Origin: Vitrella brassicaformis CCMP3155
Taxonomy: Eukaryota > Protista > Chromerida
NCBI GenBank assembly: GCA_001179505.1
Contig: CDMY01000715.1
Span: 1-27,857 of the forward strand
Length of the DNA: 27,857 bases
Direction: 5' to 3'
The notes beneath the pieces are model-generated. The model saw only the letters and a list, made by a program, of their open reading frames with translations. It was not told where the DNA came from and did not search any database. The position numbers were made by a program, and so were the translations under genes. Position 1 is the stretch's first letter. Each line of letters opens with the position of its first letter. Shown in pieces: positions 824 through 25,100 of the stretch.

Positions 824-2232
824 ATGGGAGGTGCGTTGGCCGGACGACACACAGTATACCGTGCGGTTCACGCGGCGGCTGCTCGCCTTCCGTCTGTGTC
901 TGTTCGTTCTCAGGATTGTTGTCTCACTGTCGGCCCCTCGAGCCGCCAGCTATTAGCACGCTGGGTTTCCTGGATATCTATCCCAGTCGAAGCACGAAAG
1001 ATGCCGCCACTCGAGAGCTCGTCGACGGCCTCAGGAACGGCACACTGACTCTGGAGAGGGCCACTCAGTTGTTGAAAGGAGGAGCCGACGCCACAAAGAT
1101 CATTGCGAGCGGTGTGGTTGCGGAAGGCTTCTACGACCTCCACGGGAGGGACTACAGCCTCGTGCAGCTGGCGATCGAGCACCATCGGACGGCTGACAGT
1201 CTGGACATCATCCGGCTGCTTCTTGACCGAGGCGCTGACATCAACTTCAAAGGGTACCTCTTCGGCCCCCCTGTCGAGCTCGCCGTTCAGCGTGGCCGCT
1301 ATGACGTCGCCCACATGCTGCTGGATGACCCCAAAGTCGACATCAAGGCTGCGGGCCCGCTGCTGTGGCGCGTGGCATCCGACGCCCGTGACGGCAGTGT
1401 GTCGTCAGCCGAGAAGCTCAGGATGGCCAAGAGGTTGGTGCGAATGGGCGGGAGGGCCGCCATCTTGTTCAACACTCCCCCGTATGAGCTTCCTCACAGA
1501 GACTGCCAGCATCCCACGGCCTTGCACAGCTTCTGTGCCCACCCCCTTGACCACCTTCCTGCACAGCTGCACCTCATGGCGTACCTCATCCACAAGGCCG
1601 GCCGTTACATCGTCCGTATTGCAGAGCCATCCACCGATCGCACCCCCCTCTCGTATGCGGCTCGGGCAGACTTCACTGATCCGTCTGCGCTTCGGCTGCT
1701 GCTGCGCAACGGAGCGTCGCTGAGGGGCGTCTGGCCGGCATCCGAACATTCATCGAGGCGCTTCAGTGGGGTGGAACTGCTGGCAAAATGGAAGCGGGCG
1801 CGGCTGCGAGACGCTTACTGTGATTATCTGCGCTATGACCTGCCGGTGCAGGTCAGCATCGCCGTCAAGACCGCCCTCCTGCCCGCACGCGCACTGACGA
1901 GGACGGCACTGCCCGATGGCGTCATTGAGAGCATCGAGGCGCTCATCGACGAGGACGGCGCGGGCGGCCCACCTGCTGTCTCTCTTCACCTTGACATCAT
2001 CGGCGAGGACCCCTTCGGCAGCCGCATCAATGAGCTGGCGAACAGCTACCTGTCGACGGCCTACCGCAACATCCGGGGGACCGCGAATAACAAAGGTGTC
2101 AGCAGCAAGGAGTGGATGCGGCATCGGTACGATGTCCTGATGCGGCGAGTGCGCGAGGCAGCAAAGGAGGAAGAGCGCCGATTCGGTCCTATGAAATCAG
2201 CCCCATTGGTGCTGAGAAACAGAGAGAAATGA
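824..2232 (+). CDS. Ankyrin-repeat protein, ~441 aa, predicted N-myristoylated; join(824..830,914..2232)
   Basis: ORF 916..2232 has ankyrin repeats (YSLVQLAIEH..IIRLLLDRGADIN; PPVELAVQRGRYDVAHMLLD; RTPLSYAA..LRLLLRNGAS) but starts only at TTG. ATG GGA G|GTGCGT (824-830) splices in phase 1 to TTCTCAG|GA (913/914), giving MGGLLSHC. Stop TGA at 2230-2232. Confidence 0.85.
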
Positions 2233-6527: not shown

Positions 6528-8059
6528 CTAGCTGTTGCAGTCACTCGTCAATGCCGCAACTTCCTCGGCCACCGTCTCCTTCGACTTAAGGGGCGGCTGC
6601 ACGCACATACGCGCGCAAAGACGCCGATCCGTCTGTCCTTCTTTATCCGTCTCCTCGCACACTTACCGCTGGTCCGGGTGGTCCGATTCCGTCGACCCAC
6701 GGCTTGCCGCTGCAGGGCCTGGCGTTGGGTGGGGGGCCAGGCAGCTTCCTCTCCTCGGCAGCACCGGGGGCCCCAGCTGCAGTCACGCATTCATTCATGT
6801 GCACCGTGTATGTGTGTTTCTGTGTCTGGTCTGCCCTCTCAGTCACTCACGGACGCACTTGGAGGATGTGGCTTCTCTCGCGCGTGAATGGGCTTGACCT
6901 TCGGCGGATGTTGTTCTCCTTTTGTTGTTGTTCCTTCCTCGCTCACTGCTTCCGTTGAGCTGCTCACCTCAGGATGCCCCTCATCTGTTTCCAATGTTTC
7001 CTCGGGAACTTTCCTGTCTTCATCTTCCGAGGCTGGCGCGGCGTCTCTTGTTTCATCTTCTTCCGGTGGCTCGTGGATGGAGAATTCCTCGGCTTGTGGT
7101 TTGTATTCTACTTCACTGTACCTCCCCATTTTCTCCTCTTCACTGGGCTCGGCTGCAGACAGAGGGAGCCGCAGAGGTGATTCATGAGCTCCAGAGTTCA
7201 TACGTACCTGGCTCCTGAGAGTCGCGCAGCGAGTCGTGAGGCTCTGTGGTATCGGCTGCAGACAGAGGGAGCCGCAGAGGTGATTCATGAGCTCCAGAGT
7301 TCATACGTACCTGGCTCCTGAGAGTCGCGCAGCGAGTCGTGAGGCTCTGTGGTATCGGCTGCAGACAGAGGGAGCCGCAGAGGTGATACATGAGCTGCAG
7401 AGTTCATACGTATCTCGCCTGGCGTAGTAGTATCTGTTGTGGACGATTGTTGATCTTGCTCGACGGAGTCGCGTATCACGCCAGCCAGTGAGGACACATC
7501 ATCTCCATCCTGTTGCGACTGGCTCGTCTCGCCTGGCCTATCGCCTCCTGGTTCAGGTCCATCTCTGTCTCGGTGGAGCTCTGAAAAGCCAAGCACATAG
7601 ACACACGTATGCGCGCGTAGGCCATGCACGGCAGCTCCCACTCCTTTGACCACCGGTGAATCTGGTATCTGCGGCAAGACGACGCATCGGGCGTCCCTTC
7701 AGGTGACCGTGACCATGTCTGTGTACAACGCCGTCTCTGTGCCGACGAGAAGCGTGCTCAACGAGGGCGGCGGGAGGTGCAGCGAGGGCCGTCTTGCTGG
7801 TCTTTTTGTGATGCTGACGCCTCACAATATCGTGGTGGTGGTGTGGCGACGTCGCGTCGACCGGAAGGATAAGAGAGCTGCCACGATGGCGACGGTGCGA
7901 CAAGTGGCGAAGATGCAGATGAGAAGGGGCCGTTGCAATGCGCTTTCGCGTCAGAAAAGAGGGCGCATGGGAATGGTTGGCTGGCGGCGTGCTAAGGAGG
8001 GAGGCAGCGGCCTGTGACGCCAGTGAAAGCAGGAGAAGAGACGGCGGCAGAATCACCAT
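6528..8059 (-). CDS. Gene A: secreted His/Arg-rich + acidic low-complexity protein, 7 exons, ~381 aa; complement(join(6528..6596,6667..6776,6859..7152,7208..7255,7311..7358,7410..7580,7654..8059))
   Basis: Signal peptide MVILPPSLLLLSLASQAAA. Phase-consistent GT-AG introns (five phase 1, last phase 0); ends ..TSDCNS*. Paralogous to gene B in exons 1-2, the last three exons and upstream DNA. The exon-2 donor is ambiguous (7410, or a GC donor at 7419; both phase 1). Confidence 0.75.
7153..7412 (-). repeat. 103-bp tandem repeat (55-nt intron + 48-nt exon), ~2.5 copies
   Basis: 7153-7255 and 7256-7358 are identical; a partial third copy 7359-7412 has 2 mismatches. Confidence 0.95.
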
Positions 8060-8422
8060 GGCCCCTCTGCAACAGTTCACGCAGTAATCATAAAGGTCTC
8101 GTCCAAGGGACGGCAGGGGTGGAATAGGGATGGCTTGAAGGGGATAAGGGGGATGAAGGTTGGGGAAAGTCAGACAAAATGTAAGACGGCAGAGACCTGG
8201 GGGCCGCCCCCAGGTCGCATGAGTTTACCAATCCCAGCGAAGCTCCGGGGAAAGCACTTTTCAAGACACCATGGACGACGTGATGCATAGAAATGTATCA
8301 TCTGTTGATCCGCCCCGCCCATCAGGTACTCTCCATTTGAATCAGCCCGCCCAGAATCAGCAGCCCATGTGCACAGCTCCCACCCTCCCGCCCTCTCTCT
8401 CCCCTGACACATCCATTGGCCA
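8060..8422. promoter_or_regulatory. Upstream region of gene A; paralogue of the B/C divergent promoter at 13874-14281
   Basis: High colinear identity to 13874-14281, including TTTACCAATCCC and CCGCCCCGCCC elements, with one ~50-bp indel. It ends at ACATCCATTGGCCA, versus ACATCCATGGCCA (the gene C start). Confidence 0.7.
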
Positions 8423-8700
8423 TGTGATGTGGTAAGATCCTGGCACCGGCGGGAACACGGCCGCCTTCATGAGTTCAGCTGCGTGTTTGTATATCCATCG
8501 AAGTACTTGTACAAGTAGTGCTTCCCATCCTTCCACCATCCCTCTCCCCAGACACGACAAACCCACCAAAGGCCTTCTCAGCGCTGCCCGTCTGCACTCC
8601 GGCACCCTCTCACATCTCCAGACCCAGAGGCGCTAATGCAGCGGGCTTGCGGTGTCAGAAAGACCCTCCCCGGGCGCACCAAGGCCCATCACACAGGTTT
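8411..8700 (+). pseudogene. Decayed 5' relic of a gene C paralogue
   Basis: Start codon broken by a 1-nt insertion. Colinear matches to gene C exon 1: 8579-8593 vs 14310-14324 (14/15), 8621-8633 vs 14356-14368 (12/13), 8665-8687 vs 14418-14440 (20/23). Confidence 0.65.
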
Positions 8701-8779
8701 GCATGGGAAAAAGCAGTGGAAGGTCTAGTCTGGTTGATCTAGCTGTTGCAGTCGCTCCCTAATCTCAAAAATCCTTCCT

Positions 8780-11700
8780 TCACCGTCTGATTCCACTCAA
8801 GGAGCGCTGAAGGGTCGCAGACAGACAGACAGACAGACAGACAGTGGTGCCGATTTGCCTTTCCTCCCGTTCTTAATCTCTGTCCTCACCGCTGGTCCGG
8901 GTGGTCCGATTCCGTCGACCCACGGCTTGCCGCTGCAGGGCCTGGCGTTGGGTGGGGAGCCAGGCAGCTTCCTCTCCTCGGCAGCACCGGGGGCCCCAGC
9001 TGCAGTCACGCATTCATTCATGTGCACCGTGTATGTGTGTTTCTGTGTCTGGTCTGCCCTCTCAGTCACGCACTTGGAGGATGTGGCTTCTGTCGTGGAA
9101 TGGGCTTGACCTTCTCCTTGACCTCCTCCTCCTTCTTTGGTGGGTGTGTCGGGTGTTCTTCTGCTGTTTCTTCCTCGCTCACTGGTTGTATCATTTCTTC
9201 CTCTTCTTCTGCTGCCACTTCGCCTTCTCCTGGCCCAGAGACATACAAAAAAGCCGGTCACTTCGTTCATCCATTCATCTGCTGTTCACTCTCTCACCTT
9301 TGCTGAGTCCTGGTATGTACTCCTCATCTTCCCATTTAGCTTTCCTTCTCTCTTCAGCTCTTGTCACGCCGGGCTCGGGCTCGTGAGCGCCTGTGTATCA
9401 TTCGTCCACGCAGCCATGGAGACACACACAGGGAGACACACACCACGCCTGTCTGCCTGCACGGTTGGCCATGCGCAATTCACTGAATGGCGTGATACTC
9501 TGCTCACCTGGTTCTTCCATAGCTGGTCCAGCCCCCTCGTCGCTGACTTGTCCATTGAGCCTCTCATCTGAGCAGGTGTGGAGAGAAACAAACCATGCCT
9601 GTGGCCTGGCAGGCGCAAGACAATGCGCTGTGCGTTGCTTACCCTCTAGTTTCTCGCGTGTACTTTCGTCAGTCTCAGTCACTGTCTGATCCACATCTGA
9701 CAGATGTTGAGACAAACAAAGCATGCCTGTGGCCTGGCAGGCGCGAGGCAGGGCAATGCGCTGTGCGTTGCGTACCCTCTGAAATGGCTGTCTGACCCAC
9801 ATCTGATGTACCTGACTCCTCTGCGCGGATGGAGACAAAACGAGACATACAATGTCGTCATACGTATGCATGTCTTACTTGCTGCGTGTTTCCTATCTTC
9901 TTCTGCTACTCCCAGCTCGGTCGTGTCTCCTTTTTCTTCCTGGCTCAATTCTTCTCCTGTTTCTTCGGGCTTTGTCTTTCTTTCTTCTGCCACCTCTTCC
10001 ACGGTCGATCCTTTATCTTCTTCTTTTTGTGTGACTTCAGACCTGCTTATCCCTTCCTCCTCTTCCTCGGTGTCTTCTTCTTCTGTTGCCACTTCAGGCT
10101 CGTTCGTTTGTCTTTCTGCTACTTCTTCCTGGGTCGATTCTCTATCTTCTCCTATTACTTCGGACCCGTTCACCGCTCGTATCACATTTTTATCAATCGC
10201 TGCTTCTTCTTCTTCTTCTTCTTGTTCTTCTCCTCCTCCTTCTCCCGTTGTTACTTGAGCTACTTCATGCTCGCTCATTCCTTCTGTCACCTCTTCTTCG
10301 ATCGGTTCATTTCCTTCTTGGGTTATTTTTTCTTCTGCCGGTTCCCCCTCGCTCACTTCCGCCTGCGATTCTTCGAGTTTTTTTGTCTCTGCTTCCGGCT
10401 TGACTGCTGATGGGACACACAGGCACGCACGTAGAAAAGACGGGAACAAAATGGGACCCTGCATGAGGGCGTGTGTTGTTGTCTGTTGCACGGTACCCCC
10501 CTCCGAAGATAAGCTTGGTTCTTCGGCTTTTCCTGGCTCTTCTGTCACACAGAGAGACATACAGAAAAGGTGCTGGCCCGGGCTTGACCTCCTTTTTCTT
10601 CGGCGGGTGTTCTTCTCGTCCGGTTTCTCCCCCGCTAACTTCTTCCGTGGTTGAGCTGCCCACCACAGCAGGCTGCTCACCTGTTTCCAATGTGCCTCGT
10701 TCTGTTCCAGAGACGCCTTGATCGCCTTGATCTGTTCCAGAGACGCCACAGAGAGACAGACAGAAAAGGCGGTCACTTCATTCATCCATTCATCTGCTGT
10801 TCACTCTCTCACCTTTCCTGGATCGTGGTATGTACTCCTCATCTTTCCATTCAGCTTTCCTTGTCTCTTCAGCGCTCGTCACGCCGGGCTCGGGCTGGTA
10901 AGCGCCTGTGTATCATTCGTCCACGCAGCCATGGAGACACACACCAGTCTGTCTGTGTCTGCAGAGTTGGCCTGTGCACGTCACTGAGTGTTGTGATATT
11001 CTGGTCACGTAGTTCTTCCATGACTGATCCGGTTTCACCGGTGACCTCTTCGCTTGTCTTCCCACGGTCTGGACAGATGTGGACACAAGACAAGACAAGA
11101 CACGACATGACCAGTAATGAATGGTACACTGTGCTCGCTGAAAGTGTCACCGCTGAGGCTCTCTTTTCGTTGTGTCTCACTCTCCGTTTCTGGGCGTTCC
11201 TGGACGCTTTCTTTGTCAACCGATTCAACTGCAGATTCCCCGCTGACAGCTTCCTCGCCCATCTTCTTCGCTGCGCAGATGGAAGGCAAGACATGCAGGA
11301 AGAAGAGTGCACTGTCGTTTGTCGTACCTGCTCCTGCAGGACGGGGAAATTTTGGTGGTCGACGACCCTCTGTTCTTTCCAGTGGTTTTTCTCTTTCTTC
11401 CGCCTCCGTCTCATCTTCCGACGCCCCGTTGGCGAGCGGTGCAGGCTCATGGCCCTCTGTTCTCGTTAGTATGTTTTCTCCTCCCGCTGCCTCTTCTCCT
11501 GATTCCAGCTCTGTTTCTCTTCCGCTCCCGGATAGGGTTAAGTCATCTTCTGGACCGTCCTCGAGAGAGCTCTCTCCCCCGGACGGGAGGCCATGTGCTG
11601 GTCCATGGCCCTCTGTTGGCTCTACATCTTTTTCTTCTTCTTCCCCCTTATGGATAGGAATCCATTCTCCTCCTTCGAGTTTGCCGCCTGCGAGCGGCAG

Positions 11701-13873
11701 AGACGTGAAGGCAAGACAATAAAGGTTCGTGGCACAAGAGAGACAGTGTGGTGTGTGTATAAGTGGACATGTGTGGATATCTGTCGTACGTGTTTCTTCT
11801 TCTGCAGTGCTCGCGGTGTCCTCCCCAGACGTTTGGCTCTCTGACGGGATATTAACCCCAGGTACTTCGCCCTCTGAAGTACTGTCTCCATGTGCTGGGA
11901 CACGCAGACGCGGATGATTGTTCTTTGAATGCGTGTGTGTGTGTGTGTTTCAGCATTCATGCTGCTGCCTTCCTGGCTGATTAAGTCTTGCCCACTTGGC
12001 AGATGGCCCGTCGTCTTCTGCAGCGCGGCCTCTGTCTCCCAAGATGGCCGATGCCCCGTCGTCTTGTTCAAATCGGCTTCTGGCTTCTTGGATGGCCCAA
12101 GTCCTGTGACTTGTTCTTTCTCGGAGGGGACGCCATGCCCTCTTGTCTCTTGCAGCTCTTTTTCTGTCTCTCCCGCCTCCGTCTCTTCTCCCGATGTCAC
12201 GGTGGCGAGCGGTGCAGGCTTATGGCCCTCTGTTCTCGTTAGTACGTTTTCTCTAGCCACCGCCTCTTCTTCTGATTCCAGCACTTTTTCTCCCTCGCTC
12301 TCCGACAGGGTAAGGCCATGTTCTGAGACGTCTTCTGGTGCGCTCTCTCTGTCGGACTGGAAGCCATGTGCTGGCGCATGACCCTGTGTTCCTTCTACAT
12401 CCTTTTCTCCTCCGCCCCCCCTCTTGTCGATAGGAATCCGTTCTCCTTCCTCCAGGTTGCCGCCTGCAGGGGACGGAGACGTGAAGGGAAGACAATAAAT
12501 GTTCGTGGCACAAGAGAGCAGTGCGGTGCGCATATAGGCAAGCGTGTCACGTGTGTGAATGTCTGTCGTACGTGCGTTCTCTTCCGTGTTCCCGATGTCT
12601 TCCCCAGATATTTCTTGCTCTGAAGGGATGCCCTCTTCAGGTATTTCCCTCCCTGAAGTACTCTCTGCCCGCGGTGAGACACGCAGGCAGACACGCATGA
12701 GGTGTGCTCTGCATGTGTGTGCGTGTCTCTCAGTGTTCATACTGCTGCCTTCCTGGCTGATTGTATCCCGCCCACCTGGCAGATGGCCCGTCGTCTTCTG
12801 CAGTTCGGCCTCTATCTCCCAAGATGGCCGATGCCCCGTCGTGTTCTTCAAATCGGCTTCTGTCTTCCCGCCCAGGCCAGGTCCTGAGACGTCTTCCAGC
12901 TTTTTGTCGCCCTTGCCACGGACCAACCCAAGGTTGGCGATTAGGGCGTGTCCGGGGTCTGCCGGTACACGTACAAGCTATGGTGTTGCGTCAGCTGGCT
13001 GATTTCTGCCCTTCCCACCAAGCTTGAATATCTCTTCCAGCGGTTTTTTGACCTCGGACTCGTCTGAGCGAACGGACTCCTCTTCGGCTGACAGAAACAC
13101 ATTCATAGTGTATGACGCACCCACCGAGCGTGACGCTTTCTTCTTTGCTGTGTGCACCTGACAAAGGCCCTTCAGCTTGGGAGGAGGCTTTGCCGGCGGC
13201 GTCGTGGGGCATGGTGTACTCGGGAGCTGCAGACAGAGGGAGCCACAGACGTGATGCATGAGCTGCAGAGCTCATACTACCTTCTCCCTGAGACTCGTTC
13301 TGTGTATTCATGTCTTCGTCCATCGAGTATCGGATTCCACTGTCTCCCTGTTGTGACTGGCCGCTCTCCCCGGCATGCTGATCAGCTCCCGGTCCATCGC
13401 CATCTCTGTGCCCGTGCAGCTCTGGACAGCCATCCATTCATACACAGATGCATGTGCCAGCAGAACAGGCGCAGCAGCATCCATTCATCCGATTGCATAC
13501 GGGCGAATCTGCTGTGTCCAGCGGAGGGACGATCCATCGAACGCCCCTTCAGATGACTGTGACCATGCTTGTGTGCAACATGTCTGTGCCGACGAGCCGC
13601 GTGCTCGACAAGGGCGGCGGGAGGTGCAGCGGGAGCCACTTTGCTGGTCCTCTTGTGATGCTGACGTCTTGCAGCATGGTGGTGGTGTTGTGGCATCGTT
13701 GCGTTGACCGGCAGGGCAAGTGGTAGGGACGGGTGGCGAAGATTGAGGGGAGAGGGGGGCGCTGCAAAGCGCCTTCGTGTCAGAAAAGAGCCCGCATGGG
13801 AAGGATTGTCTGGCGGCGTGCGAAAGAGAGAGGCGGCGGCATGAGTTGCCAGTGAGAGCAGGACAATCACCAT
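8780..13873 (-). CDS. Gene B: large secreted His/Arg-rich + Glu-rich repetitive protein, 22 exons, ~1130 aa; complement(join(8780..8806,8890..8999,9074..9229,9298..9390,9508..9567,9643..9696,9776..9820,9879..10406,10497..10541,10681..10731,10813..10905,10985..11068,11130..11270,11328..11687,11790..11894,11969..12463,12572..12664,12749..12958,13019..13087,13158..13226,13281..13421,13501..13873))
   Basis: Signal peptide MVIVLLSLATHAAA. The acidic ORF pieces in the six-frame track join into one open frame when the T/G/C-rich intervening segments are removed as introns (20 phase 1, last phase 0). Some donors have in-frame alternatives (exon 5: 12743/12749/12776; exon 7: 11969/11996). Confidence 0.7.
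9255..10944 (-). repeat. Dispersed internal duplication in gene B: 9255-9429 ~ 10770-10944 (offset 1515)
   Basis: Both copies hold a 93-nt exon (GAHEPEPGVTRAEERRKAKWEDEEYIP / GAYQPEPGVTSAEETRKAEWKDEEYIP) plus near-identical flanking intron DNA. Confidence 0.9.
9568..9775 (-). repeat. Two paralogous neighbouring introns in gene B (9568-9642 and 9697-9775)
   Basis: Shared CAACGCACAGCGCATTG...GCGCCTGCCAGGCCACAGGCATG core (minus strand), about 130-bp period. Confidence 0.9.
11431..12890 (-). repeat. ~775-780-bp tandem duplication in gene B: 11431-12110 ~ 12204-12890
   Basis: Anchors: AGATGGCCCGTCGTCTTCTGCAG at 12001 and 12781; GGCGAGCGGTGCAGGCT at 11431 and 12204; paralogous introns 11688-11789 and 12464-12571. 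Confidence 0.9.
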
Positions 13874-14274
13874 GGCCCCTCTGCAATGGGATGGGTTCAC
13901 GCAGGAAGCATAAAGGTCTCGCCCAAGGGACGGCAGGGGTGGAATAGGGATGGCTTGTGGGATAAGGGGGATGAAGGCTGGGAAAGTCGGACAAAATGTA
14001 AGACGGCAGAGACCTGGGGGCCGCCCCCAGGTCGCATGAGTTTACCAATCCCAGCGAAGCTCCCGGGAACAAGCACTTTATCAAGACACCATGAACGACA
14101 CGATGCACATGAGAAGATACTGGTACGTAATCAAGAAGACCGTGCCCAATTCACGATGAAATGTATCATCTGTTGACCCGCCCCGCCCATAGGTACTCTC
14201 CATTGAATCAGCCCGCCCAGCCCCAGCAGCCCACGGCTCCCACCCTCCCGCCCTCTCTCTCCCCTGACACATCC
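13874..14274. promoter_or_regulatory. Putative 401-bp bidirectional promoter between gene B (-) and gene C (+)
   Basis: Divergent ATGs at 13873 and 14275; CCAAT-like and GC-box-like (CCGCCCCGCCC) motifs; conserved in the duplicate at 8060-8422. Confidence 0.6.
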
Positions 14275-17200
14275 ATGGCCAGCCCACACCCCGCTGCAAC
14301 GGGCCGCCCCAGCGCTGCTCGTCTTCCCTCTCCCGAGCTCCGCGTCACTGCGGCTGATCCAGAGGCGCCGCCACGGCCAGTGTCCAGGAGCCGGTCGGCC
14401 AAGAGCTCACACAGCAGCCTCCACGGGCGCGCCAAGACCCGCCACACGAGGTCGCGTGATAGTGTCGGATTCCCCTGCTCCCAGCTGGCAGGCGGCTGTG
14501 CAGGGGAGAAGAGCACGGTCCTTGTGCTGGGCACAGTGTTCGTCGTGACGGTGGTGCTCATCCAGCTGTATAGCCTCTATGTGTCCGCTGTGCGGTACCG
14601 CCGCGGCAAGGGGGCTGAGCTGCACACGATTGTGGTGGACGCGACGCAAACACGGCAGAATGTGTCTTTGGGAGGGATGCTCATCGACCTCAACACGCTC
14701 AAGGACGTCAACACCCACCACAGGCCCGCGCACAGGTCGTTTTGGGGCGCCTTTGGCGGGGAGAAAGGGGCGGAGGAGAGGGATGGGGAGGCCATTCATA
14801 TGCTGTCGGTGAATTCGACTGTTGAGGCATTGCACATGGACATGATTCGGGTGCGCGTATCGCCGTCGGCGCTTGAGAGGGTCTCTGAGGCGCCTGTCGA
14901 TGCATCGGGTACACATGCACGCAACCGGGCCATTCATCCCATTGCATTTGTGTGGTGTGGTCGTATAGATGCCGAGATGGATGCCTTCGTCGCCAGGTTG
15001 TATCGAGAGGTAGGTGGCTTGTGACGGATAAGGCAGCAGCACCCGTCAGGCCCACAAATCACCGTGTCCTTTGTTGTCCGCCCATCATTCAGAGCCCCGA
15101 GCTCGATGCTCTCTTGGCTGTTGGCCGCGCATTCATCAAAGAGTGAGGAAGATGGTCACACACGCACCCATCCATGGGCCACTTCCCTGTCTCTTTCTCA
15201 CGGTAGGCGCCCCCTGTCGTCGTCCGAGAAGCCCACCCACGGCAAAGCCAGAAATGAGACCCATCTCACCAACCTGACCTCTATCACCGGCAGCAGCAGC
15301 AGCAGCAGCAGCAACAGCACACAGGACGATCTGCCAGTCTCGTCACCCCCACCTCCCCTATACAAGCGTCAAGTGCTCGGCGTGCTGATCAACGCCATCC
15401 CGCGCAACTACATCCACCTGGCGGCGGGCTTCACCCTCGGCGACCCACTGCCGCCCCAGTGCGGGGTGGACCCTTACCTGCACAAGTAAACCACCCCTCT
15501 CCCTCCCTCTCCCCCAACTCCCCTCCCCCCTCTGCCCCCATACCTGTCTGTGTGTTGCCAGTGGCACAGCGAAGTGGCAGTTCCTAGACACGAGCCTCTT
15601 CCAGCACTCGGCCTTCTCATTTCAGCCACGCCCCGGTGCGTCGGTTGCGCTGTCTTCCGGTGAGGGCCGGAGCGACGAGGTGCGTGCACAGGCGGACAGG
15701 ATGCGGCCGTCGTGGTACCCCTGGCTGGGAGGAGGGCCGGTGCCCGATGAGCAGGGGAGGAGAAATGCGCTGCTCAAGTGCCTCAAAAGAGATGTATGTC
15801 CCTGTAGAAAGAGAGGAGCCATGTGTCTGCCACGCACATCGGGGGTTCTGTGATCCTTTTTGCAGGCGATTCCTGATTTGTCGAAGCTGTATGTGTCGCT
15901 GCTCAAGTATCTGAGAGACAGAGGTCACAACACACATAACACCCACACAAACACGGGAGCACCCTCTCTCTGTGTCCACAGGTTTCCCGATAGAGAGCGT
16001 GGAGGTGGCGTACAAGCCCGACCTGTGGTCGCTGCACATCCCGCCCGCCTCCCTGGCACTCTTGCTCAAACACATCGCACTGCAGCTCTACGACAGACGG
16101 CTCGACCGGGTCAAACTATATGGTATGTGGAGACGCCCATGTCTCTCTCTCTTTCTACCTGTGTGTGCGGCTGTGATGTGGTAAGGTCCTGGCACCAGCC
16201 TCTTGAACCACTCTGCGCCGTATTTCGCGGCCCTGCAGGCTGACGAGTCCGCATATAACACCCTGGCAGGCTGGTACGGAGACGAACACAACAACACACT
16301 GAGCATAAGACAATGCCCTCGTCTGCTGACAGGTCGGTGCAGGCATGGGATGACGTCCTGGCCGCCCCCTACACCCTGGCTCGCCTCCAGGCACACACCA
16401 ACGCACACACAGACAGCAGCGACAAACACCCGGCCAGCATCGGCAGCAGCAGACACGGCAGCAATGGGTCCGGGCTGGAGGGTCTCTGGCGATGGGCGAC
16501 GGAAAAGGGCAGGCGGCTGCTGCTCAGAAGAGGACACAATGGCAGTCACGGCGCATCAACGACATCTGTGTCCCACGACTGGGTGACGACTTTCGACAGC
16601 AGCGTGTTTCTGCGTCAGCAGCTGGCGGCCTTCCACCAGCACCTGATGGCTCTGAAGGTGCCTCTCAAGACATCTGCACACCAACCCTTCGCGGCTGCAC
16701 GTTTGTATGCCCACGCGCATGGGACAAAAGAGGAACACACCGACAAGGAGAAGGAGAAGGAGAAACGGTGAGGGAAAGAGAGAGGCGAGTACACACACAC
16801 AGACACCCAGAGAGAGAGGGACAGGGGGTGGTGCACATGGGTTGCCGGATGTGTGTGTGGTCAGTCGTCACCCCTTGCCCCTGTATGTTAGCGAGTTTGG
16901 TGTGGGCACCACCTACCTCGGCGGCAGGAAGTTCCAGCACACGCCCGCAGACTGCTACACTACACCACACAGGTGACACCCACACCCACACCCACACCCA
17001 CACCCACACAGGAAAGCCTTTCTCCTGATGCATCAACCATGTCTCGCTGCATGCAGCCCAACAGAGCACGCGAGTGTGACGTCCTCAAGCAGATATTACG
17101 GCGTCATGCTCACGGCATACCTACTCACATTCGTCAACTACGGTCGACCAATGAGGCAGACAGGCAGACAGCAAAGCAGAAGAAGACAAACCGATGCCTG

Positions 17201-18027: not shown

Positions 18028-18327
18028 NNNNNNNNNNNNNNNNNNNNNNNNNNNNNNNNNNNNNNNNNNNNNNNNNNNNNNNNNNNNNNNNNNNNNNNNN
18101 NNNNNNNNNNNNNNNNNNNNNNNNNNNNNNNNNNNNNNNNNNNNNNNNNNNNNNNNNNNNNNNNNNNNNNNNNNNNNNNNNNNNNNNNNNNNNNNNNNNN
18201 NNNNNNNNNNNNNNNNNNNNNNNNNNNNNNNNNNNNNNNNNNNNNNNNNNNNNNNNNNNNNNNNNNNNNNNNNNNNNNNNNNNNNNNNNNNNNNNNNNNN
18301 NNNNNNNNNNNNNNNNNNNNNNNNNNN
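18028..18327. other. Assembly gap (300 N) flanked by G-runs
   Basis: Directly visible; hides the end of gene C. Confidence 0.99.
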
Positions 18328-22132: not shown

Positions 22133-25100
22133 ATGAAGCAGATGGCCACCCGAACACTCGCCCGCCGGCGGAGGGCCTTCGCCACACTCGCCAGACGCCA
22201 CGACCACGCACACACCGTCCTCCCATCCACCTCATTCGCACACACAAGACGGGCACAGCACACACAGGCCGACCAAGCGGCACACAGTGGACACAATGAT
22301 CCCCATCCCGGCAAGGCGCCACAACCACAACCGGGCTTCCTGCAACAGTACATGCAGACTGTCGACAGCATGACAGCAGTCAACCACCACCAGCAGCAGC
22401 AGCAGCAGCAGCCGGCTGGTCCGTCGATGGACTTCCCGACGGAGAGTATGGGTCATTGCAGTGTGGAAGATGTGGCGGTGCTGCAGGCGTCTTATGCGGC
22501 GGAGTGGGTGAGCAGCCCGCTGAGCGTCCACGAGAAGGACGTCCTGCAGCAGCGGTGGATTGCTATGACGCAGGATGAGGCGTGCTGCAGATTCCTCAAG
22601 GTGACCACACCAGACCAGACACACAGTCCGGCAGCCAGCCAGACACACAGACACACAGACAGACCCACACCACCTGTGGTGCATGCCCCGTGTGTCTGTG
22701 TGTCTGTGTGTGTGTGTGTGTGTGTGTCTGTAGGACAAGTGTGACATCCCTTTGTTCTTCTTGAAGGACCGGCGGCTGCAGCAGCGCTTCTGCCTGTACG
22801 TTAACAACGCCCCCCCACTGCTCAAGGACCTGCGCGCATCCCTCCTCGGCCTCTTCGACCCACACAAGGCCGACCTGCGCAACGACAAAACATACAACAT
22901 GGTGGAGTGAGTCAGTCAGGAAGTGCCAGTGTCACGCCACGCCCACACAGAGAATGCATGCCCGCTCTAATCGCTTTCTGTTCAGATGCTGCAATCGGTG
23001 GATGATGGCTCTCCAGCACCAGCACCAGCACCACCAACAGCAGCAGCAGAATGGTCGTCAGGACGGCGGGAGATAATGGACCAAGCGTCATGCGGAGAAC
23101 CACAGCCGTGGGAGGTGCACCGGCTGTTGCTGAGCCAGGTGCAGCAGTACGGCCCCCTGATGAGGGCGCTGCTGCCCTTCCTCGCAGAGTCGTACGGCGA
23201 GCAGCTCATCGCATTTCGGAACGTCAAGGGATTGGCGGTAAGTGCCAAAGAGGGAGGGAGGGAGGGAGGGAGGGGTGTGCTATGAGTGTGATGGTTGGTC
23301 AGGATTTGCGTCTGCCTCACGAGTCCTATCCGGCTGCTCGTGCGTCGCCCCGAGCCGTGCACATCCACGTGGGCCCCACCAACAGCGGCAAGACCCACCA
23401 CGCCCTCAGACGACTTGCTACCGCACACACAGGCACGCATCACAACACACTTCACTTGGACAGACTGACGGAAAGACCACGCCTCCACACAATCGTGTGT
23501 GTGTGTGTAGGTGTGTATTGCGGCCCATTGCGTCTGCTTGCGTGGGAGGTGCACGAGAAGCTGACAGCGGGGGGCATCAAGTGCGACCTGCTCACCGGAC
23601 AGGAAACCGTCAAACAAGACGTACGCACACACACACACACACGGCGATTGATGCCATCCTATGCACACCAAGTGTGAAGAAAACCGAGTGCACTGGTCTG
23701 GTGTGGTCTCTGTGTGTGTGTGCCATAGGGTTCTCATCACCTGTCGTGTACAGTAGAGATGGCGCCCATGGGTGTGCCGGTGGAGTGTGCCGTCATCGAC
23801 GAGATGCAGATGGTCGGCGACAAACAGCGGGGTGCCGCGTGGACCAGGGCATTCCTCGCCATTCAGGTACTCAACGCACCCTCGTCAGTCACACACAGAC
23901 GGGACGGGAGACGATCCTGATGGGTCGTATGTGCGTGTGCGTGTAGGCCGAGGAGCTGCATGTGTGTGGCGACCCCCGGTTTGCGGAGCTCATTAGAGAG
24001 ATCGCCGCAGACTGCGGCGACCAGGTCAGGTTGGTCAGACAAACCAAGACACCCACACCCCCCACCCCACCGCATGGCATGTTGTGTGTTCACCCATCCC
24101 CATGAATCGTTCAGGTGTTCCTGCATTCGTACGAGCGGCTGTCTCCTTTATCTGTGGCACCGTCGTCTCTGTCGTCATTGGATGCGGTGGAGGACCACGA
24201 CTGCGTCATATGCTTCACGCGCAAAGACATCCTCAGGATGAAAAGAGACCTAGAGAAGCTAGGTAGGCAGGTACCTACCTGCTGGACGGGCGCCTGTCCA
24301 TATGCTATGCGTGTGTGTGTAGGTCGGAGTGTGTGTGTGGTGTACGGCTCATTGCCCCCCGAGACGCGCAGGCAGCAGGCCCGGCTCTTCAACGACCCAC
24401 ACACACAAGTACGCACACACAACGACAGCAACACAGCACATGCACCCACGTGCCTCTCCATCCCTCCCTCCCTCCCTGCCCCGGTCAGCACCGTGTGTTG
24501 GTGGCGTCCGACGCTGTGGGTATGGGGCTGAATCTGAATATCCGGCGCATAGTCTTCCGCTCACTCAAGAAGTATGACGGCAGCGGTGTTCGGCAGCTCA
24601 CGCCTTTAGAGATCAAACAAATCGCCGGACGCGCCGGCAGGTAAGGTACTTGTGGGGGTGGGTGAGGTAGGCAGGGGATGTGTGTGCGTGTGCGTGTGGG
24701 ATGATGTGTAGGTATCAGAGCGAGCACCCGGAGGGCTGGGTGACGTGTCTCAGGGAAGACGAATTCGACACTCTCAAAGAGGCAATGGGAGGTGAGCTGC
24801 GAGCCAGACACACCACACAAGCATCCCCTCACACCACATCACACAACTTCTCACCTCTCCCCTCCCTCCCTCCCTCCCTCCCTGTGTGAGCTACAGCCCC
24901 TGTGGACAGTGATGCGGTCGATCGCGCCGGCCTTTTCCCGACATTTGAACAATTTGACGCGTTCAGGTATGGACCCCCCCCCCGCCCCCGAAACACACCA
25001 CACACTGCACCATGCCTCACCCACTCGCTGCGTGAATGCAGTCGTGAGCTGGAGGGCGAAGCGAAGAGGCCGCTGCCCTTCGACGAACTACTGCAAAGGT

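What the first reader, a model, noticed from the sequence alone, without database searches (positions are those of the whole stretch)
8890..13873. A 22-exon gene with 20 consecutive phase-1 introns: modular exon-shuffled secreted protein
Every internal exon from 2 to 20 of gene B has a length divisible by 3 and phase-1 boundaries, and gene A obeys the same rule. Any exon can therefore be duplicated, lost or skipped without a frameshift. Three independent internal duplications are visible (periods ~130, ~780 and 1515 bp), and B is about 3 times longer than A. Phase-1 symmetric shuffling is the classic route for metazoan extracellular proteins. Here it appears to act on low-complexity acidic modules in a protist and could generate a combinatorial isoform repertoire. 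This is the strongest candidate for an undescribed system in the window.
Basis: partly seen in the sequence, partly recalled or inferred. Interest (0 to 1): 0.8.

Follow-up and report, generated by a model that had tools for sequence, protein, structure and literature searches.

The report
Alga gene with twenty same-phase introns
A gene found only in the alga Vitrella is confirmed by a full-length transcript to be cut by 20 introns at the same codon position, a layout known from animal genes such as elastin; it grew by copying its own pieces, not by swapping with other genes.

Summary
The window is a whole contig of Vitrella brassicaformis. A public full-length cDNA (L006, 3803 nt) matches 22 minus-strand exons. 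Exons 1-20 match with no mismatch. All 21 introns are GT-AG; introns 1-20 are phase 1 and intron 21 is phase 0. Exons 2-20 are all multiples of 3. The downstream paralogue A (7 exons, 381 aa) follows the same rule. The repeats of about 128, 776 and 1515 bp are real.

- No exon of A or B occurs anywhere else in the 72.7 Mb genome, so there is no shuffling between genes.
- The two tandem internal duplications in B, and the upstream edge of the 1.5 kb one, break inside exons, so they did not need matching intron phases.
- Only about 15 intron positions are independent.
- The Glu/Gly-rich codon usage places 52-73% of plausible splice contexts in phase 1. This raises the chance probability from about 1e-8 to between 5e-5 and 1e-2.
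- A set of splice isoforms is unproven. The shorter public versions are an Augustus prediction and a probable assembly collapse.

The product is a 117 kDa acidic, probably disordered orphan protein with a signal-like N-terminus. Tropoelastin shows the same all-phase-1 cassette design. This is a new member of a known kind.

The parts
13501..14016 (-). Gene B exon 1: 5'UTR from at least 14016, ATG at 13873. Encodes a signal-like hydrophobic start and then a 104-aa basic His-rich region. Ends in phase 1.
   Evidence: cDNA L006 nt 1-519; the CDS part has 0 mismatches; hydropathy and charge
13281..13421 (-). B exon 2 (141 nt, phase 1-1)
   Evidence: 0 mismatches to the cDNA
13158..13226 (-). B exon 3 (69 nt, 1-1)
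13019..13087 (-). B exon 4 (69 nt, 1-1)
12776..12958 (-). B exon 5 (183 nt, 1-1). Its 3' part begins the first 776-bp unit.
12572..12664 (-). B exon 6 (93 nt, 1-1), paralogue of exon 8
11996..12463 (-). B exon 7 (468 nt, 1-1). A fusion exon: its 5' part resembles exon 9 and its 3' part resembles exon 5. It holds the junction of the 776-bp tandem duplication.
11790..11894 (-). B exon 8 (105 nt, 1-1)
11328..11687 (-). B exon 9 (360 nt, 1-1)
11181..11270 (-). B exon 10 (90 nt, 1-1). The Augustus model uses a GT donor at 11150 instead; a further in-frame GT lies at 11129. Both would also give phase 1.
11009..11068 (-). B exon 11 (60 nt, 1-1)
10813..10905 (-). B exon 12 (93 nt, 1-1), paralogue of exon 19
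10681..10731 (-). B exon 13 (51 nt, 1-1)
10542..10680 (-). B intron 13 (139 nt, phase 1). Its 5' part (10693-10623) is homologous to coding sequence of gene A's exon 5. It is the remnant of a duplicated near-terminal exon that is now spliced out.
   Evidence: (D17)
10497..10541 (-). B exon 14 (45 nt, 1-1)
9879..10406 (-). B exon 15 (528 nt, 1-1). The most acidic block, with an internal repeat of about 130 nt (10156-10022 and 10027-9896).
9776..9820 (-). B exon 16 (45 nt, 1-1)
9643..9696 (-). B exon 17 (54 nt, 1-1). Created by the 128-bp tandem duplication of an exon 3' part plus its intron.
9508..9567 (-). B exon 18 (60 nt, 1-1)
9298..9390 (-). B exon 19 (93 nt, 1-1)
9074..9229 (-). B exon 20 (156 nt, 1-1)
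8890..8999 (-). B exon 21 (110 nt, phase 1 to 0). Holds the only Cys of the protein. The 8885-9073 tract that contains it is 98% identical to the matching tract of gene A (6662-6850).
   Evidence: (D4)
8404..8806 (-). B exon 22: 27 nt of CDS (stop TGA at 8782-8780) plus 3'UTR
6528..8059 (-). Gene A, tandem paralogue. Exons 8059-7654, 7580-7410, 7358-7311, 7255-7208, 7152-6859, 6776-6667 and 6596-6528. Introns 1-5 are phase 1 and intron 6 is phase 0; 381 codons.
   Evidence: exon 1 is 68% identical to B's; the last exon appears in transcript-derived P0002
7144..7418 (-). 103-bp tandem array in gene A (48-nt exon plus 55-nt intron, 2.6 copies, 97-98% identical)
   Evidence: (D6)
11366..12896 (-). 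The two units of the ~776-bp tandem duplication (12896-12138 and 12116-11366, 77% identical). It makes introns 5 and 7, and introns 6 and 8, copies of each other.
   Evidence: (D2, D7, D11)
10752..11030 (-). Upstream copy of the 1.5-kb-spaced duplication (exon 11 part, intron 11, exon 12, intron 12), 83% identical to 9529-9237
   Evidence: (D5)
9237..9529 (-). Downstream copy of the 1.5-kb-spaced duplication (exon 18 part, intron 18, exon 19, intron 19)
   Evidence: (D5)
9565..9780 (-). 128-bp tandem duplication (9780-9694 and 9647-9565). Introns 16 and 17 are 91% identical.
   Evidence: (D16)
13874..14099 (-). 5' flank and 5'UTR of B. It is 95% identical to the flank of A (8279-8060), whereas exon 1 and intron 1 are only 64-76% identical. 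Probably a gene-conversion tract or a constrained promoter.
   Evidence: (D12, D14)

Best explanation
Locus B is a transcribed, lineage-specific gene of Vitrella brassicaformis, and locus A is its shorter tandem paralogue.

The product is inferred to enter the secretory pathway through an N-terminal signal-like segment. It has a 104-aa basic His-rich region (pI 12), then about 920 aa of Glu/Gly/Pro/Ser/Thr-rich acidic sequence that is probably disordered (pI 4.4), then a short basic tail with the only Cys.

The run of 20 phase-1 introns is best explained by three ordinary causes acting together, not by a dedicated system.
1. Descent. Nested in-frame duplications copied introns together with their phase. 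Five of the 20 are copies, and three of A's five are array copies.
2. Codon composition. 47% of codons start with G and 36% end with A, so G| and AG| exon ends fall mostly in phase 1. Depending on the context used, 52-73% of candidate sites are phase 1.
3. A frame filter. In a gene whose acceptors are already phase 1, a newly used donor yields an open frame only if it is also phase 1. Intron 13 is an example: a remnant of a duplicated near-terminal exon was turned into intron through a GTGAGC donor now read in phase 1.

Shown: the gene structure, transcription, the duplications, the lack of relatives and the composition bias. Inferred: secretion, disorder, and the relative weight of the three causes.
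For: - Structure and transcription.
- Orphan status: Pfam gave nothing on 10 exon peptides. An exhaustive HMMER search with exon 7 found only two Vitrella records among 1.84 billion representatives. The word search found three Vitrella records. The Atlas search gave no usable hit. In the own genome all 17 matches lie in A or B.
- Duplications and which introns are copies.
- Exon-internal breakpoints: exon 7 is a fusion of exon 9-like and exon 5-like parts. In the 128-bp unit an exonic TCAG became the acceptor.
- Composition null: in exons 2-20, xAG| sites are 55% phase 1, MAG|R sites 73%, and a PWM of the observed junctions gives 52%.
- Intron 13's 5' part is homologous to gene A's coding sequence and is absent from the cDNA.
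- Protein properties: pI 4.62, 19.3% Glu, GRAVY -1.18, one Cys. The only hydrophobic peak is at residues 1-19. The acidic body has net charge 0.166 per residue and normalised hydropathy 0.36, below the charge-hydropathy boundary of 0.47 derived from those numbers.
- Weak sequence constraint: dN/dS is 0.5-1.5, and dN (0.10-0.33) is about equal to the divergence of the flanking introns (0.10-0.23).
Against: - Even the most generous composition null leaves 15 of 15 at P about 0.01. The junctions match the MAG|R consensus in only 5 of 20 cases. Something more than composition and descent may be at work, such as selection for cassette behaviour.
- I could not measure this genome's own intron-phase distribution.
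- Secretion rests only on hydropathy and the small residues before the presumed cleavage site; no signal-peptide predictor was available. The long basic, hydroxylated stretch after the signal also fits the transit part of a two-part plastid leader.
- Older duplications that can no longer be detected could lower the number of independent introns below 15.
Confidence: 0.68

Rival explanations
1. Selected cassette gene. The uniform phase 1 is kept by selection because the cell uses exon skipping, alternative splice sites or rapid copy-number change to make many in-frame variants of a secreted acidic protein, as animals do with tropoelastin.
For: - Three public versions differ only by in-frame blocks.
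- The annotated 600-aa model skips exon 6, exon 8 plus most of exon 9, and exons 14-15. It also uses other donors and acceptors, all in phase 1.
- The 858-aa record lacks exactly one 187-aa repeat unit.
- P(15 of 15) stays at or below 0.01 under every null tried.
- Seven of ten 3n-length introns could be retained without a stop.
Against: - The 600-aa model is an Augustus prediction (PMC4501334) and is in frame by construction.
- The 858-aa record's deletion junction lies inside sequence shared by the two repeat units (aligned). The record also ends with gene A's last exon, as expected of an assembly collapse or chimera.
- The only contiguous full-length cDNA contains all 22 exons.
- No further fragments were found in the 85-271 aa or 472-1500 aa ranges.
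- The stop-free intron signal is weak once the general depletion of stop triplets in these introns is considered.
Confidence: 0.15
2. Classical exon shuffling. The modules were gathered from, or spread to, other genes by recombination within phase-1 introns.
For: Symmetric 1-1 exons are the signature of mobile modules in animals (PMC3488318). Another first-stage note reports 1-1 module boundaries in a different Vitrella gene (s1-197297, unchecked).
Against: - No exon matches anything outside loci A and B in the 72.7 Mb genome, nor outside Vitrella for exon 7.
- No Pfam domain was found.
- The introns are not dispersed elements: three tested introns each match only their local copy.
- The duplication breakpoints in B lie in exons.
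Confidence: 0.03
3. The protein is sent to the plastid rather than secreted. The signal-like start plus the 104-aa basic, Ser/Thr/Pro/Ala/His-rich stretch would form a two-part leader of the kind used for complex plastids. This concerns where the product goes, not how the gene is built.
For: Residues 21-124 have 17 K+R, 16 H and only 3 D+E (pI 12). They follow a hydrophobic start, and the pattern is kept in gene A. The make-up of transit peptides is taken from general knowledge.
Against: - 104 aa is long for a transit peptide, and His runs are not typical of one.
- The residue after the presumed cleavage site (AAS|L) is Leu in both genes, not the Phe common in red-lineage complex plastids (general knowledge).
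- No predictor was available.
Confidence: 0.2
4. The locus is decaying, or a mis-annotated set of several genes, and the regular phases come from model building.
For: Weak sequence constraint. The annotated model is truncated relative to the cDNA.
Against: One cDNA spans all 22 exons with an intact 1090-codon frame, a 5'UTR and a 3'UTR. The junctions were not chosen by me but are fixed by the cDNA.
Confidence: 0.02

Closest known systems
Tropoelastin (ELN) gene of vertebrates
   Same: All splice sites are phase 1:1, so exons behave as cassettes that can be dropped without changing the reading frame (PMC12554196). It also encodes a secreted, low-complexity, largely disordered protein built of repeated exon-sized modules.
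   Different: There is no sequence relationship: no Pfam or library match. Tropoelastin is hydrophobic and Lys-rich, while this protein is highly acidic. Cassette splicing is documented for tropoelastin but not shown here. The organism here is a unicellular alga.
Human genes for mostly disordered proteins assembled from symmetric exons (Schad, Kalmar and Tompa 2013, PMC3632108)
   Same: Disorder-type composition, symmetric exons and growth by internal tandem duplication occur together. This matches the general pattern described in that paper.
   Different: That pattern was described for the human genome. Here it appears in a chromerid alga, in a gene without relatives, and with an unbroken run of 20 phase-1 introns.
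Phase 1-1 mobile modules of animal extracellular proteins (exon shuffling; Patthy, from my own knowledge; phase-1 preference of mobile domains in PMC3488318)
   Same: Signal-peptide protein whose internal exons all have phase-1 boundaries.
   Different: The animal modules are folded domains found in many unrelated genes. The exons here encode no recognised domain and occur in no other gene.
Titin PEVK exons
   Same: Many short exons of one phase that encode an acidic or Pro-rich disordered spring region and arose by tandem duplication.
   Different: Titin is intracellular and animal-specific, and its differential splicing is documented. There is no sequence similarity.

Membership tests
Same-phase cassette-exon genes (tropoelastin-type architecture) | All coding introns are in one phase | tested here: met
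   20 of 21 introns are phase 1. Only the last is phase 0.
Same-phase cassette-exon genes (tropoelastin-type architecture) | Internal exons are multiples of 3 | tested here: met
   Exons 2-20 are all divisible by 3.
Same-phase cassette-exon genes (tropoelastin-type architecture) | Cassette-like alternative splicing is actually used | tested here: inconclusive
   The public versions differ by in-frame blocks, but one is an Augustus model and one a probable assembly collapse or chimera (PMC4501334). No read-level data were available.
Same-phase cassette-exon genes (tropoelastin-type architecture) | Sequence homology to tropoelastin | tested here: not met
   No Pfam family. Only Vitrella hits in the exhaustive search with exon 7.
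Exon shuffling between genes | The same module is present in unrelated genes | tested here: not met
   All 17 genome matches of the full protein lie in loci A and B.
Exon shuffling between genes | Rearrangement breakpoints lie in introns | tested here: not met
   In B, the 776-bp and 128-bp units and the upstream edge of the 1.5-kb copy break inside exons. The edges of gene A's 103-bp array cannot be placed.
Introner / transposon-derived introns | Many near-identical intron copies spread over the genome | tested here: not met
   Introns 6, 12 and 18 each match only their own local paralogue. The other introns were not tested.
Secretory-pathway protein | N-terminal hydrophobic signal and no other membrane segment | tested here: met
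   Kyte-Doolittle 19-residue maximum is 1.54 at residue 1. Beyond residue 30 the maximum is 0.71. The same kind of start is present in gene A.
Secretory-pathway protein | Predicted cleavage site and experimental secretion | not testable with these tools
   No signal-peptide predictor or proteomic data were available.
Intrinsically disordered acidic protein | High net charge, low hydropathy, few aromatic or Cys residues | tested here: met
   19.3% Glu, GRAVY -1.18, F+W+Y 1.7%, one Cys. Disorder itself is inferred from composition.

The most novel reading that the evidence does not exclude
A unicellular alga maintains a tropoelastin-like cassette gene. The unbroken phase-1 architecture would be preserved by selection because exon skipping, in-frame intron retention or fast repeat-number change produces a variable set of secreted acidic matrix proteins. 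Modular, phase-symmetric gene design for extracellular disordered proteins would then have arisen independently outside animals.
Probability: 0.15. Interest if true: 0.6.

Novelty: new member of a known kind. Interest (0 to 1): 0.35.

Why it matters
Long runs of same-phase introns with symmetric exons are textbook features of animal extracellular and disordered proteins, and I found no report of one in chromerids. This locus gives a transcript-validated example in a free-living relative of apicomplexan parasites.

It also comes with a visible history: nested duplications of different ages, a duplicated near-terminal exon turned into intron, and an exonic TCAG turned into an acceptor. This makes it a compact test case for a standing question: how much of an intron-phase bias comes from codon composition and descent, and how much from selection for frame-neutral modularity. 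Here composition alone moves the expected phase-1 share from one third to between one half and three quarters.

On the practical side, the public gene model (CEM31143.1, 600 aa) is much shorter than the product supported by the cDNA (1090 aa) and should be corrected.

Tried and rejected
I redid everything from coordinates alone.
Exons were searched one by one by reference. The full-length sequences used (P0001-P0003, L006) were returned by the tools.
- Pfam on 10 exon peptides of A and B: nothing.
- Word search with the exon 1 region (120-383 aa range): nothing, so gene A's 381-aa product is not on record at that length.
- Word search with exon 7 (85-271 aa range), to look for isoform fragments: nothing.
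- Scan of metagenome contigs with P0003: no relatives.
- Exact look-up of P0001's contig: not on record.
- ESM Atlas look-alikes: no usable hit.
- Introner hypothesis: rejected for introns 6, 12 and 18, each of which matches only its local copy.
- Idea that introns 12 and 19 derive from sequence that is coding in gene A. The MAFFT alignment looked suggestive, but the local alignment is no better than shuffles (z 1.4-1.6). Gain in B versus loss in A stays open.
- Deeper homology among exons that would reduce the number of independent introns: none beyond the known pairs.
- Enrichment of introns without stops in the upstream frame. It looked strong against mononucleotide shuffles (16 of 21). It weakens once two things are considered: stop triplets are generally rare in these introns (0.025 against 0.042 expected), and GTGAG/GTAAG donors load stops into one other frame.
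- Literature: no paper mentions these accessions, Vitrella together with intron phase, or exon shuffling in chromerids in this sense.
- The low-GC patch at about 18 kb is only an assembly gap.
- Pfam on ORFs of the neighbouring + strand gene gave nothing, so I did not test the 'glycoside hydrolase' label in note s1-199397.

Full report
**What the window is.** The 27,857-base window is an entire contig (C715) of a 72.7 Mb assembly. A protein of this locus is on record as CEM31143.1, 'unnamed protein product [Vitrella brassicaformis CCMP3155]', on a contig of exactly 27,857 bases. The organism is therefore the chromerid alga Vitrella brassicaformis, as earlier notes of this scan suggested. Nothing here is human or pathogen-derived.

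**Checking the observation.** The + strand between 8.9 and 13.9 kb is pyrimidine-rich (AT skew down to -0.42), so the gene lies on the minus strand.
- From the minus-strand sequence I built a model by coordinates. It starts at the ATG at 13873 and has GT-AG introns of 54-139 nt. Every intron came out in phase 1 and every internal exon was a multiple of 3.
- Independent proof came from the protein libraries. An exhaustive HMMER search with exon 7 found two records, both from Vitrella. A word search with one of them found a third, P0003 (1090 aa), encoded on a 3803-nt JGI contig with one uninterrupted frame, which is a cDNA.
- BLASTN of that cDNA (L006) against the window gives 22 collinear blocks.
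- An exon-by-exon comparison gives 0 mismatches over exons 1-20, 1 in exon 21 and 0 in exon 22, with GT-AG at all 21 introns.
- Introns 1-20 are phase 1 and intron 21 is phase 0. Exons 2-20 measure 141, 69, 69, 183, 93, 468, 105, 360, 90, 60, 93, 51, 45, 528, 45, 54, 60, 93 and 156 nt.
- My own model differed from the cDNA only at exon 10, where the donor used is 11180 and not 11129. It had also stopped at an in-frame TGA in what is really intron 20.
Exon 22 (8806-8404) lies beyond it.

**Gene A.** Gene A lies downstream on the same strand (8059-6528). It has seven exons and 381 codons, with five phase-1 introns and a final phase-0 intron, all GT-AG.
- Its junctions are homologous to B's introns 1, 2 (three tandem copies), 20 and 21.
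- Its last exon appears word for word at the end of the transcript-derived record A0A7S1K8Y4, so A-type sequence is transcribed.
- No full A product is on record at its expected length.

**Repeats.** The three internal duplications are real, with spacing 128 bp, 773-780 bp and 1515 bp. Exon 15 has an internal repeat of about 130 nt. Gene A has a 103-bp array (48-nt exon plus 55-nt intron, 2.6 copies, 97-98% identical).

Divergences give an order of events:

| Event | Divergence |
|---|---|
| A/B split (intron 1; dS of exon 1) | 0.48; 0.43 |
| 776-bp unit (introns) | 0.18-0.23 |
| 1.5-kb copy (introns) | 0.13-0.16 |
| 128-bp unit (introns) | 0.10 |
| Array in gene A | youngest, 97-98% identical |

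Two tracts are far more alike between A and B than their surroundings. One is the 5' flank and 5'UTR (95%). The other runs from the end of exon 20 through intron 20 to exon 21 (98-99%). Because an intron is included, gene conversion is the simplest reading.

**Is the phase pattern more than chance?** Introns 5 and 7, 6 and 8, 11 and 18, 12 and 19, and 16 and 17 are copies of one another. No further exon pairs are related beyond these. About 15 phase-1 positions are therefore independent.
- Nearly all genomes studied show an excess of phase 0 (PMC3488318). At a 30% phase-1 share, 15 of 15 has P of about 1e-8.
- This coding sequence is peculiar, however: 47% of codons begin with G and 36% end with A.
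- I counted candidate sites inside exons 2-20 by phase, correcting the frame register of a first attempt (one search was mis-registered and one search is right). Phase 1 holds 52% of G| sites, 55% of AG| sites, 73% of MAG|R sites, and 52% under a weight matrix of the observed junctions.
- P(15 of 15) then lies between 5e-5 and 1e-2.
- The pattern is therefore real and non-random, but composition and descent explain much of it.
- I could not obtain this genome's own phase table.

**How the gene grew.** The exon-shuffling model predicts breakpoints in introns. For B's duplications this is not what is seen.
- The 776-bp tandem units run from inside exon 5 to inside exon 7, and from there to inside exon 9. 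Exon 7 is thus a fusion of an exon 9-like 5' part (59% identity over 113 residues) and an exon 5-like 3' part (65% over 50 residues). It is in frame because the unit carries 561 nt of exon.
- The 128-bp unit consists of the last 27 nt of exon 16 plus its intron. In the second copy, a TCAG that is exonic in the first copy serves as the acceptor.
- The upstream edge of the 1.5-kb copy lies inside exons 11 and 18.
- The upstream copy of the near-terminal exon was neutralised. Its remnant is the 5' part of intron 13, is still recognisably homologous to coding sequence of gene A (79% over 71 nt), and is spliced out in the cDNA. Its donor GTGAGC, which lies at a codon boundary in A, is read in phase 1 in B. 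It is thus compatible with the phase-1 acceptor that follows.
- This illustrates a simple filter: in a gene whose sites are already phase 1, only new phase-1 sites give an open frame.
- The three introns I tested are not dispersed elements. Each matches only its local copy.

**No shuffling between genes.** Searched in six frames against the whole genome, the 1090-aa product matches 17 places, all inside loci A and B. Exon 1 and exon 7 alone gave the same result. Outside the genome only the three Vitrella records exist. Pfam and the ESM Atlas give nothing. This is a two-gene orphan family.

**The isoform idea.** The three public versions differ only by in-frame blocks.
- CEM31143.1 (600 aa) starts at an internal Met. 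It skips exon 6, exon 8 with most of exon 9, and exons 14-15. It also uses other donors and acceptors, all of them phase 1. It is an Augustus prediction made with RNA-seq intron hints (PMC4501334), so it is in frame by construction. I cannot tell which of its junctions had read support.
- A0A7S1K8Y4 (858 aa) lacks exactly one 187-aa repeat unit. The junction lies inside sequence shared by the two units (aligned), and the record ends with gene A's last exon. Both features are what a short-read assembler produces at repeats.
- The only contiguous full-length cDNA contains every exon.
- Seven of the ten introns whose length is a multiple of 3 could be retained without a stop. The statistical support is weak once the general rarity of stop triplets in these introns is allowed for.
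- The repertoire therefore remains a hypothesis.

**The product.** It is 117 kDa with pI 4.6, 19.3% Glu, 10.6% Gly, 1.7% aromatic residues and one Cys.

| Residues | Character |
|---|---|
| 1-20 | The only hydrophobic segment; ends in small residues (AAS) |
| 21-124 | Strongly basic and His-rich (pI 12) |
| 125-1045 | Acidic (pI 4.4); nine copies of a T/E-x-G-H-x-P/V motif in the duplicated part |
| 1046-1090 | Basic tail |

Charge and hydropathy place the acidic body well on the disordered side of the usual boundary; this is an inference from composition. Constraint on the sequence is weak: dN/dS is 0.5-1.5 and dN is about equal to intron divergence. I infer entry into the secretory pathway. 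A two-part plastid leader is a serious alternative for the first 124 residues. The biochemical role is unknown. An acidic wall or matrix component is my best guess and is untested.

**Comparison with what is known.**
- Tropoelastin genes have all splice sites in phase 1:1, which permits cassette-like splicing (PMC12554196).
- In the human genome, genes of mostly disordered proteins tend to be built from symmetric exons that often arise by internal tandem duplication (PMC3632108).
- Mobile animal domains prefer phase-1 introns (PMC3488318).

The locus works like these but is not related to any of them by sequence. I file it as a new member of a known kind: a neat, transcript-validated case in an alveolate alga, not a new system. 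Another first-stage note reports 1-1 module boundaries in a different Vitrella gene (s1-197297). I did not check it.

Noticed in passing
window 18028-18327: The low-GC patch in the composition profile is a run of about 300 undetermined bases (GC reads 0.000, and the own-genome match is split around it). It is an assembly gap, not a biological feature.
   Followed up: yes
window 8280-8640 versus 14100-14280: The A/B tandem duplication unit (about 5.82 kb) also carried the divergent upstream region and the first part of the + strand ORF that starts at 14161. Copies are 8372-8416 against 14232-14276 (98% identical) and 8163-8252 against 13980-14069 (98%). B's 3'UTR, which runs to 8404, overlaps this partial copy on the opposite strand. 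Only 145 bp separate B's cDNA start (14016) from the neighbour's ATG, which suggests a shared two-way promoter.
   Followed up: partly
P0002 (A0A7S1K8Y4) residues 837-858; window 6531-6596 (-): A transcript-derived record joins B-type exon 21 to gene A's last exon. Either it is an assembly chimera across the 98% identical tract, or read-through splicing from B into A occurs.
   Followed up: partly
window 8404-14016 (-), record CEM31143.1: The public gene model (600 aa) is much shorter than the cDNA-supported product (1090 aa). It starts at an internal Met, omits five exons or parts of exons, and contains a 6-nt micro-exon (11333-11328). It probably needs correcting.
   Followed up: yes
introns of gene B, window 8807-13500 (-): 16 of 21 introns have no stop codon in the frame of the upstream exon. 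Seven of ten introns of 3n length could be retained in frame. Stop triplets are generally under-represented in these introns (0.025 against 0.042 expected). The frame-specific part of the signal is weak.
   Followed up: partly
window 9230-9297 and 10732-10812 (-), versus gene A exon 5 (7152-6859): Introns 12 and 19 of B have no counterpart in gene A, whose exon 5 runs uninterrupted through the homologous region. Whether B gained the intron or A lost it could not be decided.
   Followed up: partly
window 916-2232 (+): A 438-aa open frame with ankyrin repeats (Pfam Ank, Ank_2, Ank_3), unrelated to the finding.
   Followed up: no
window 8818-8844, 2961-2986, 22611-22664 and others: CAGA/ACAC-type microsatellites are frequent in the non-coding parts of the contig, including intron 21 of B just upstream of exon 22.
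   Followed up: no
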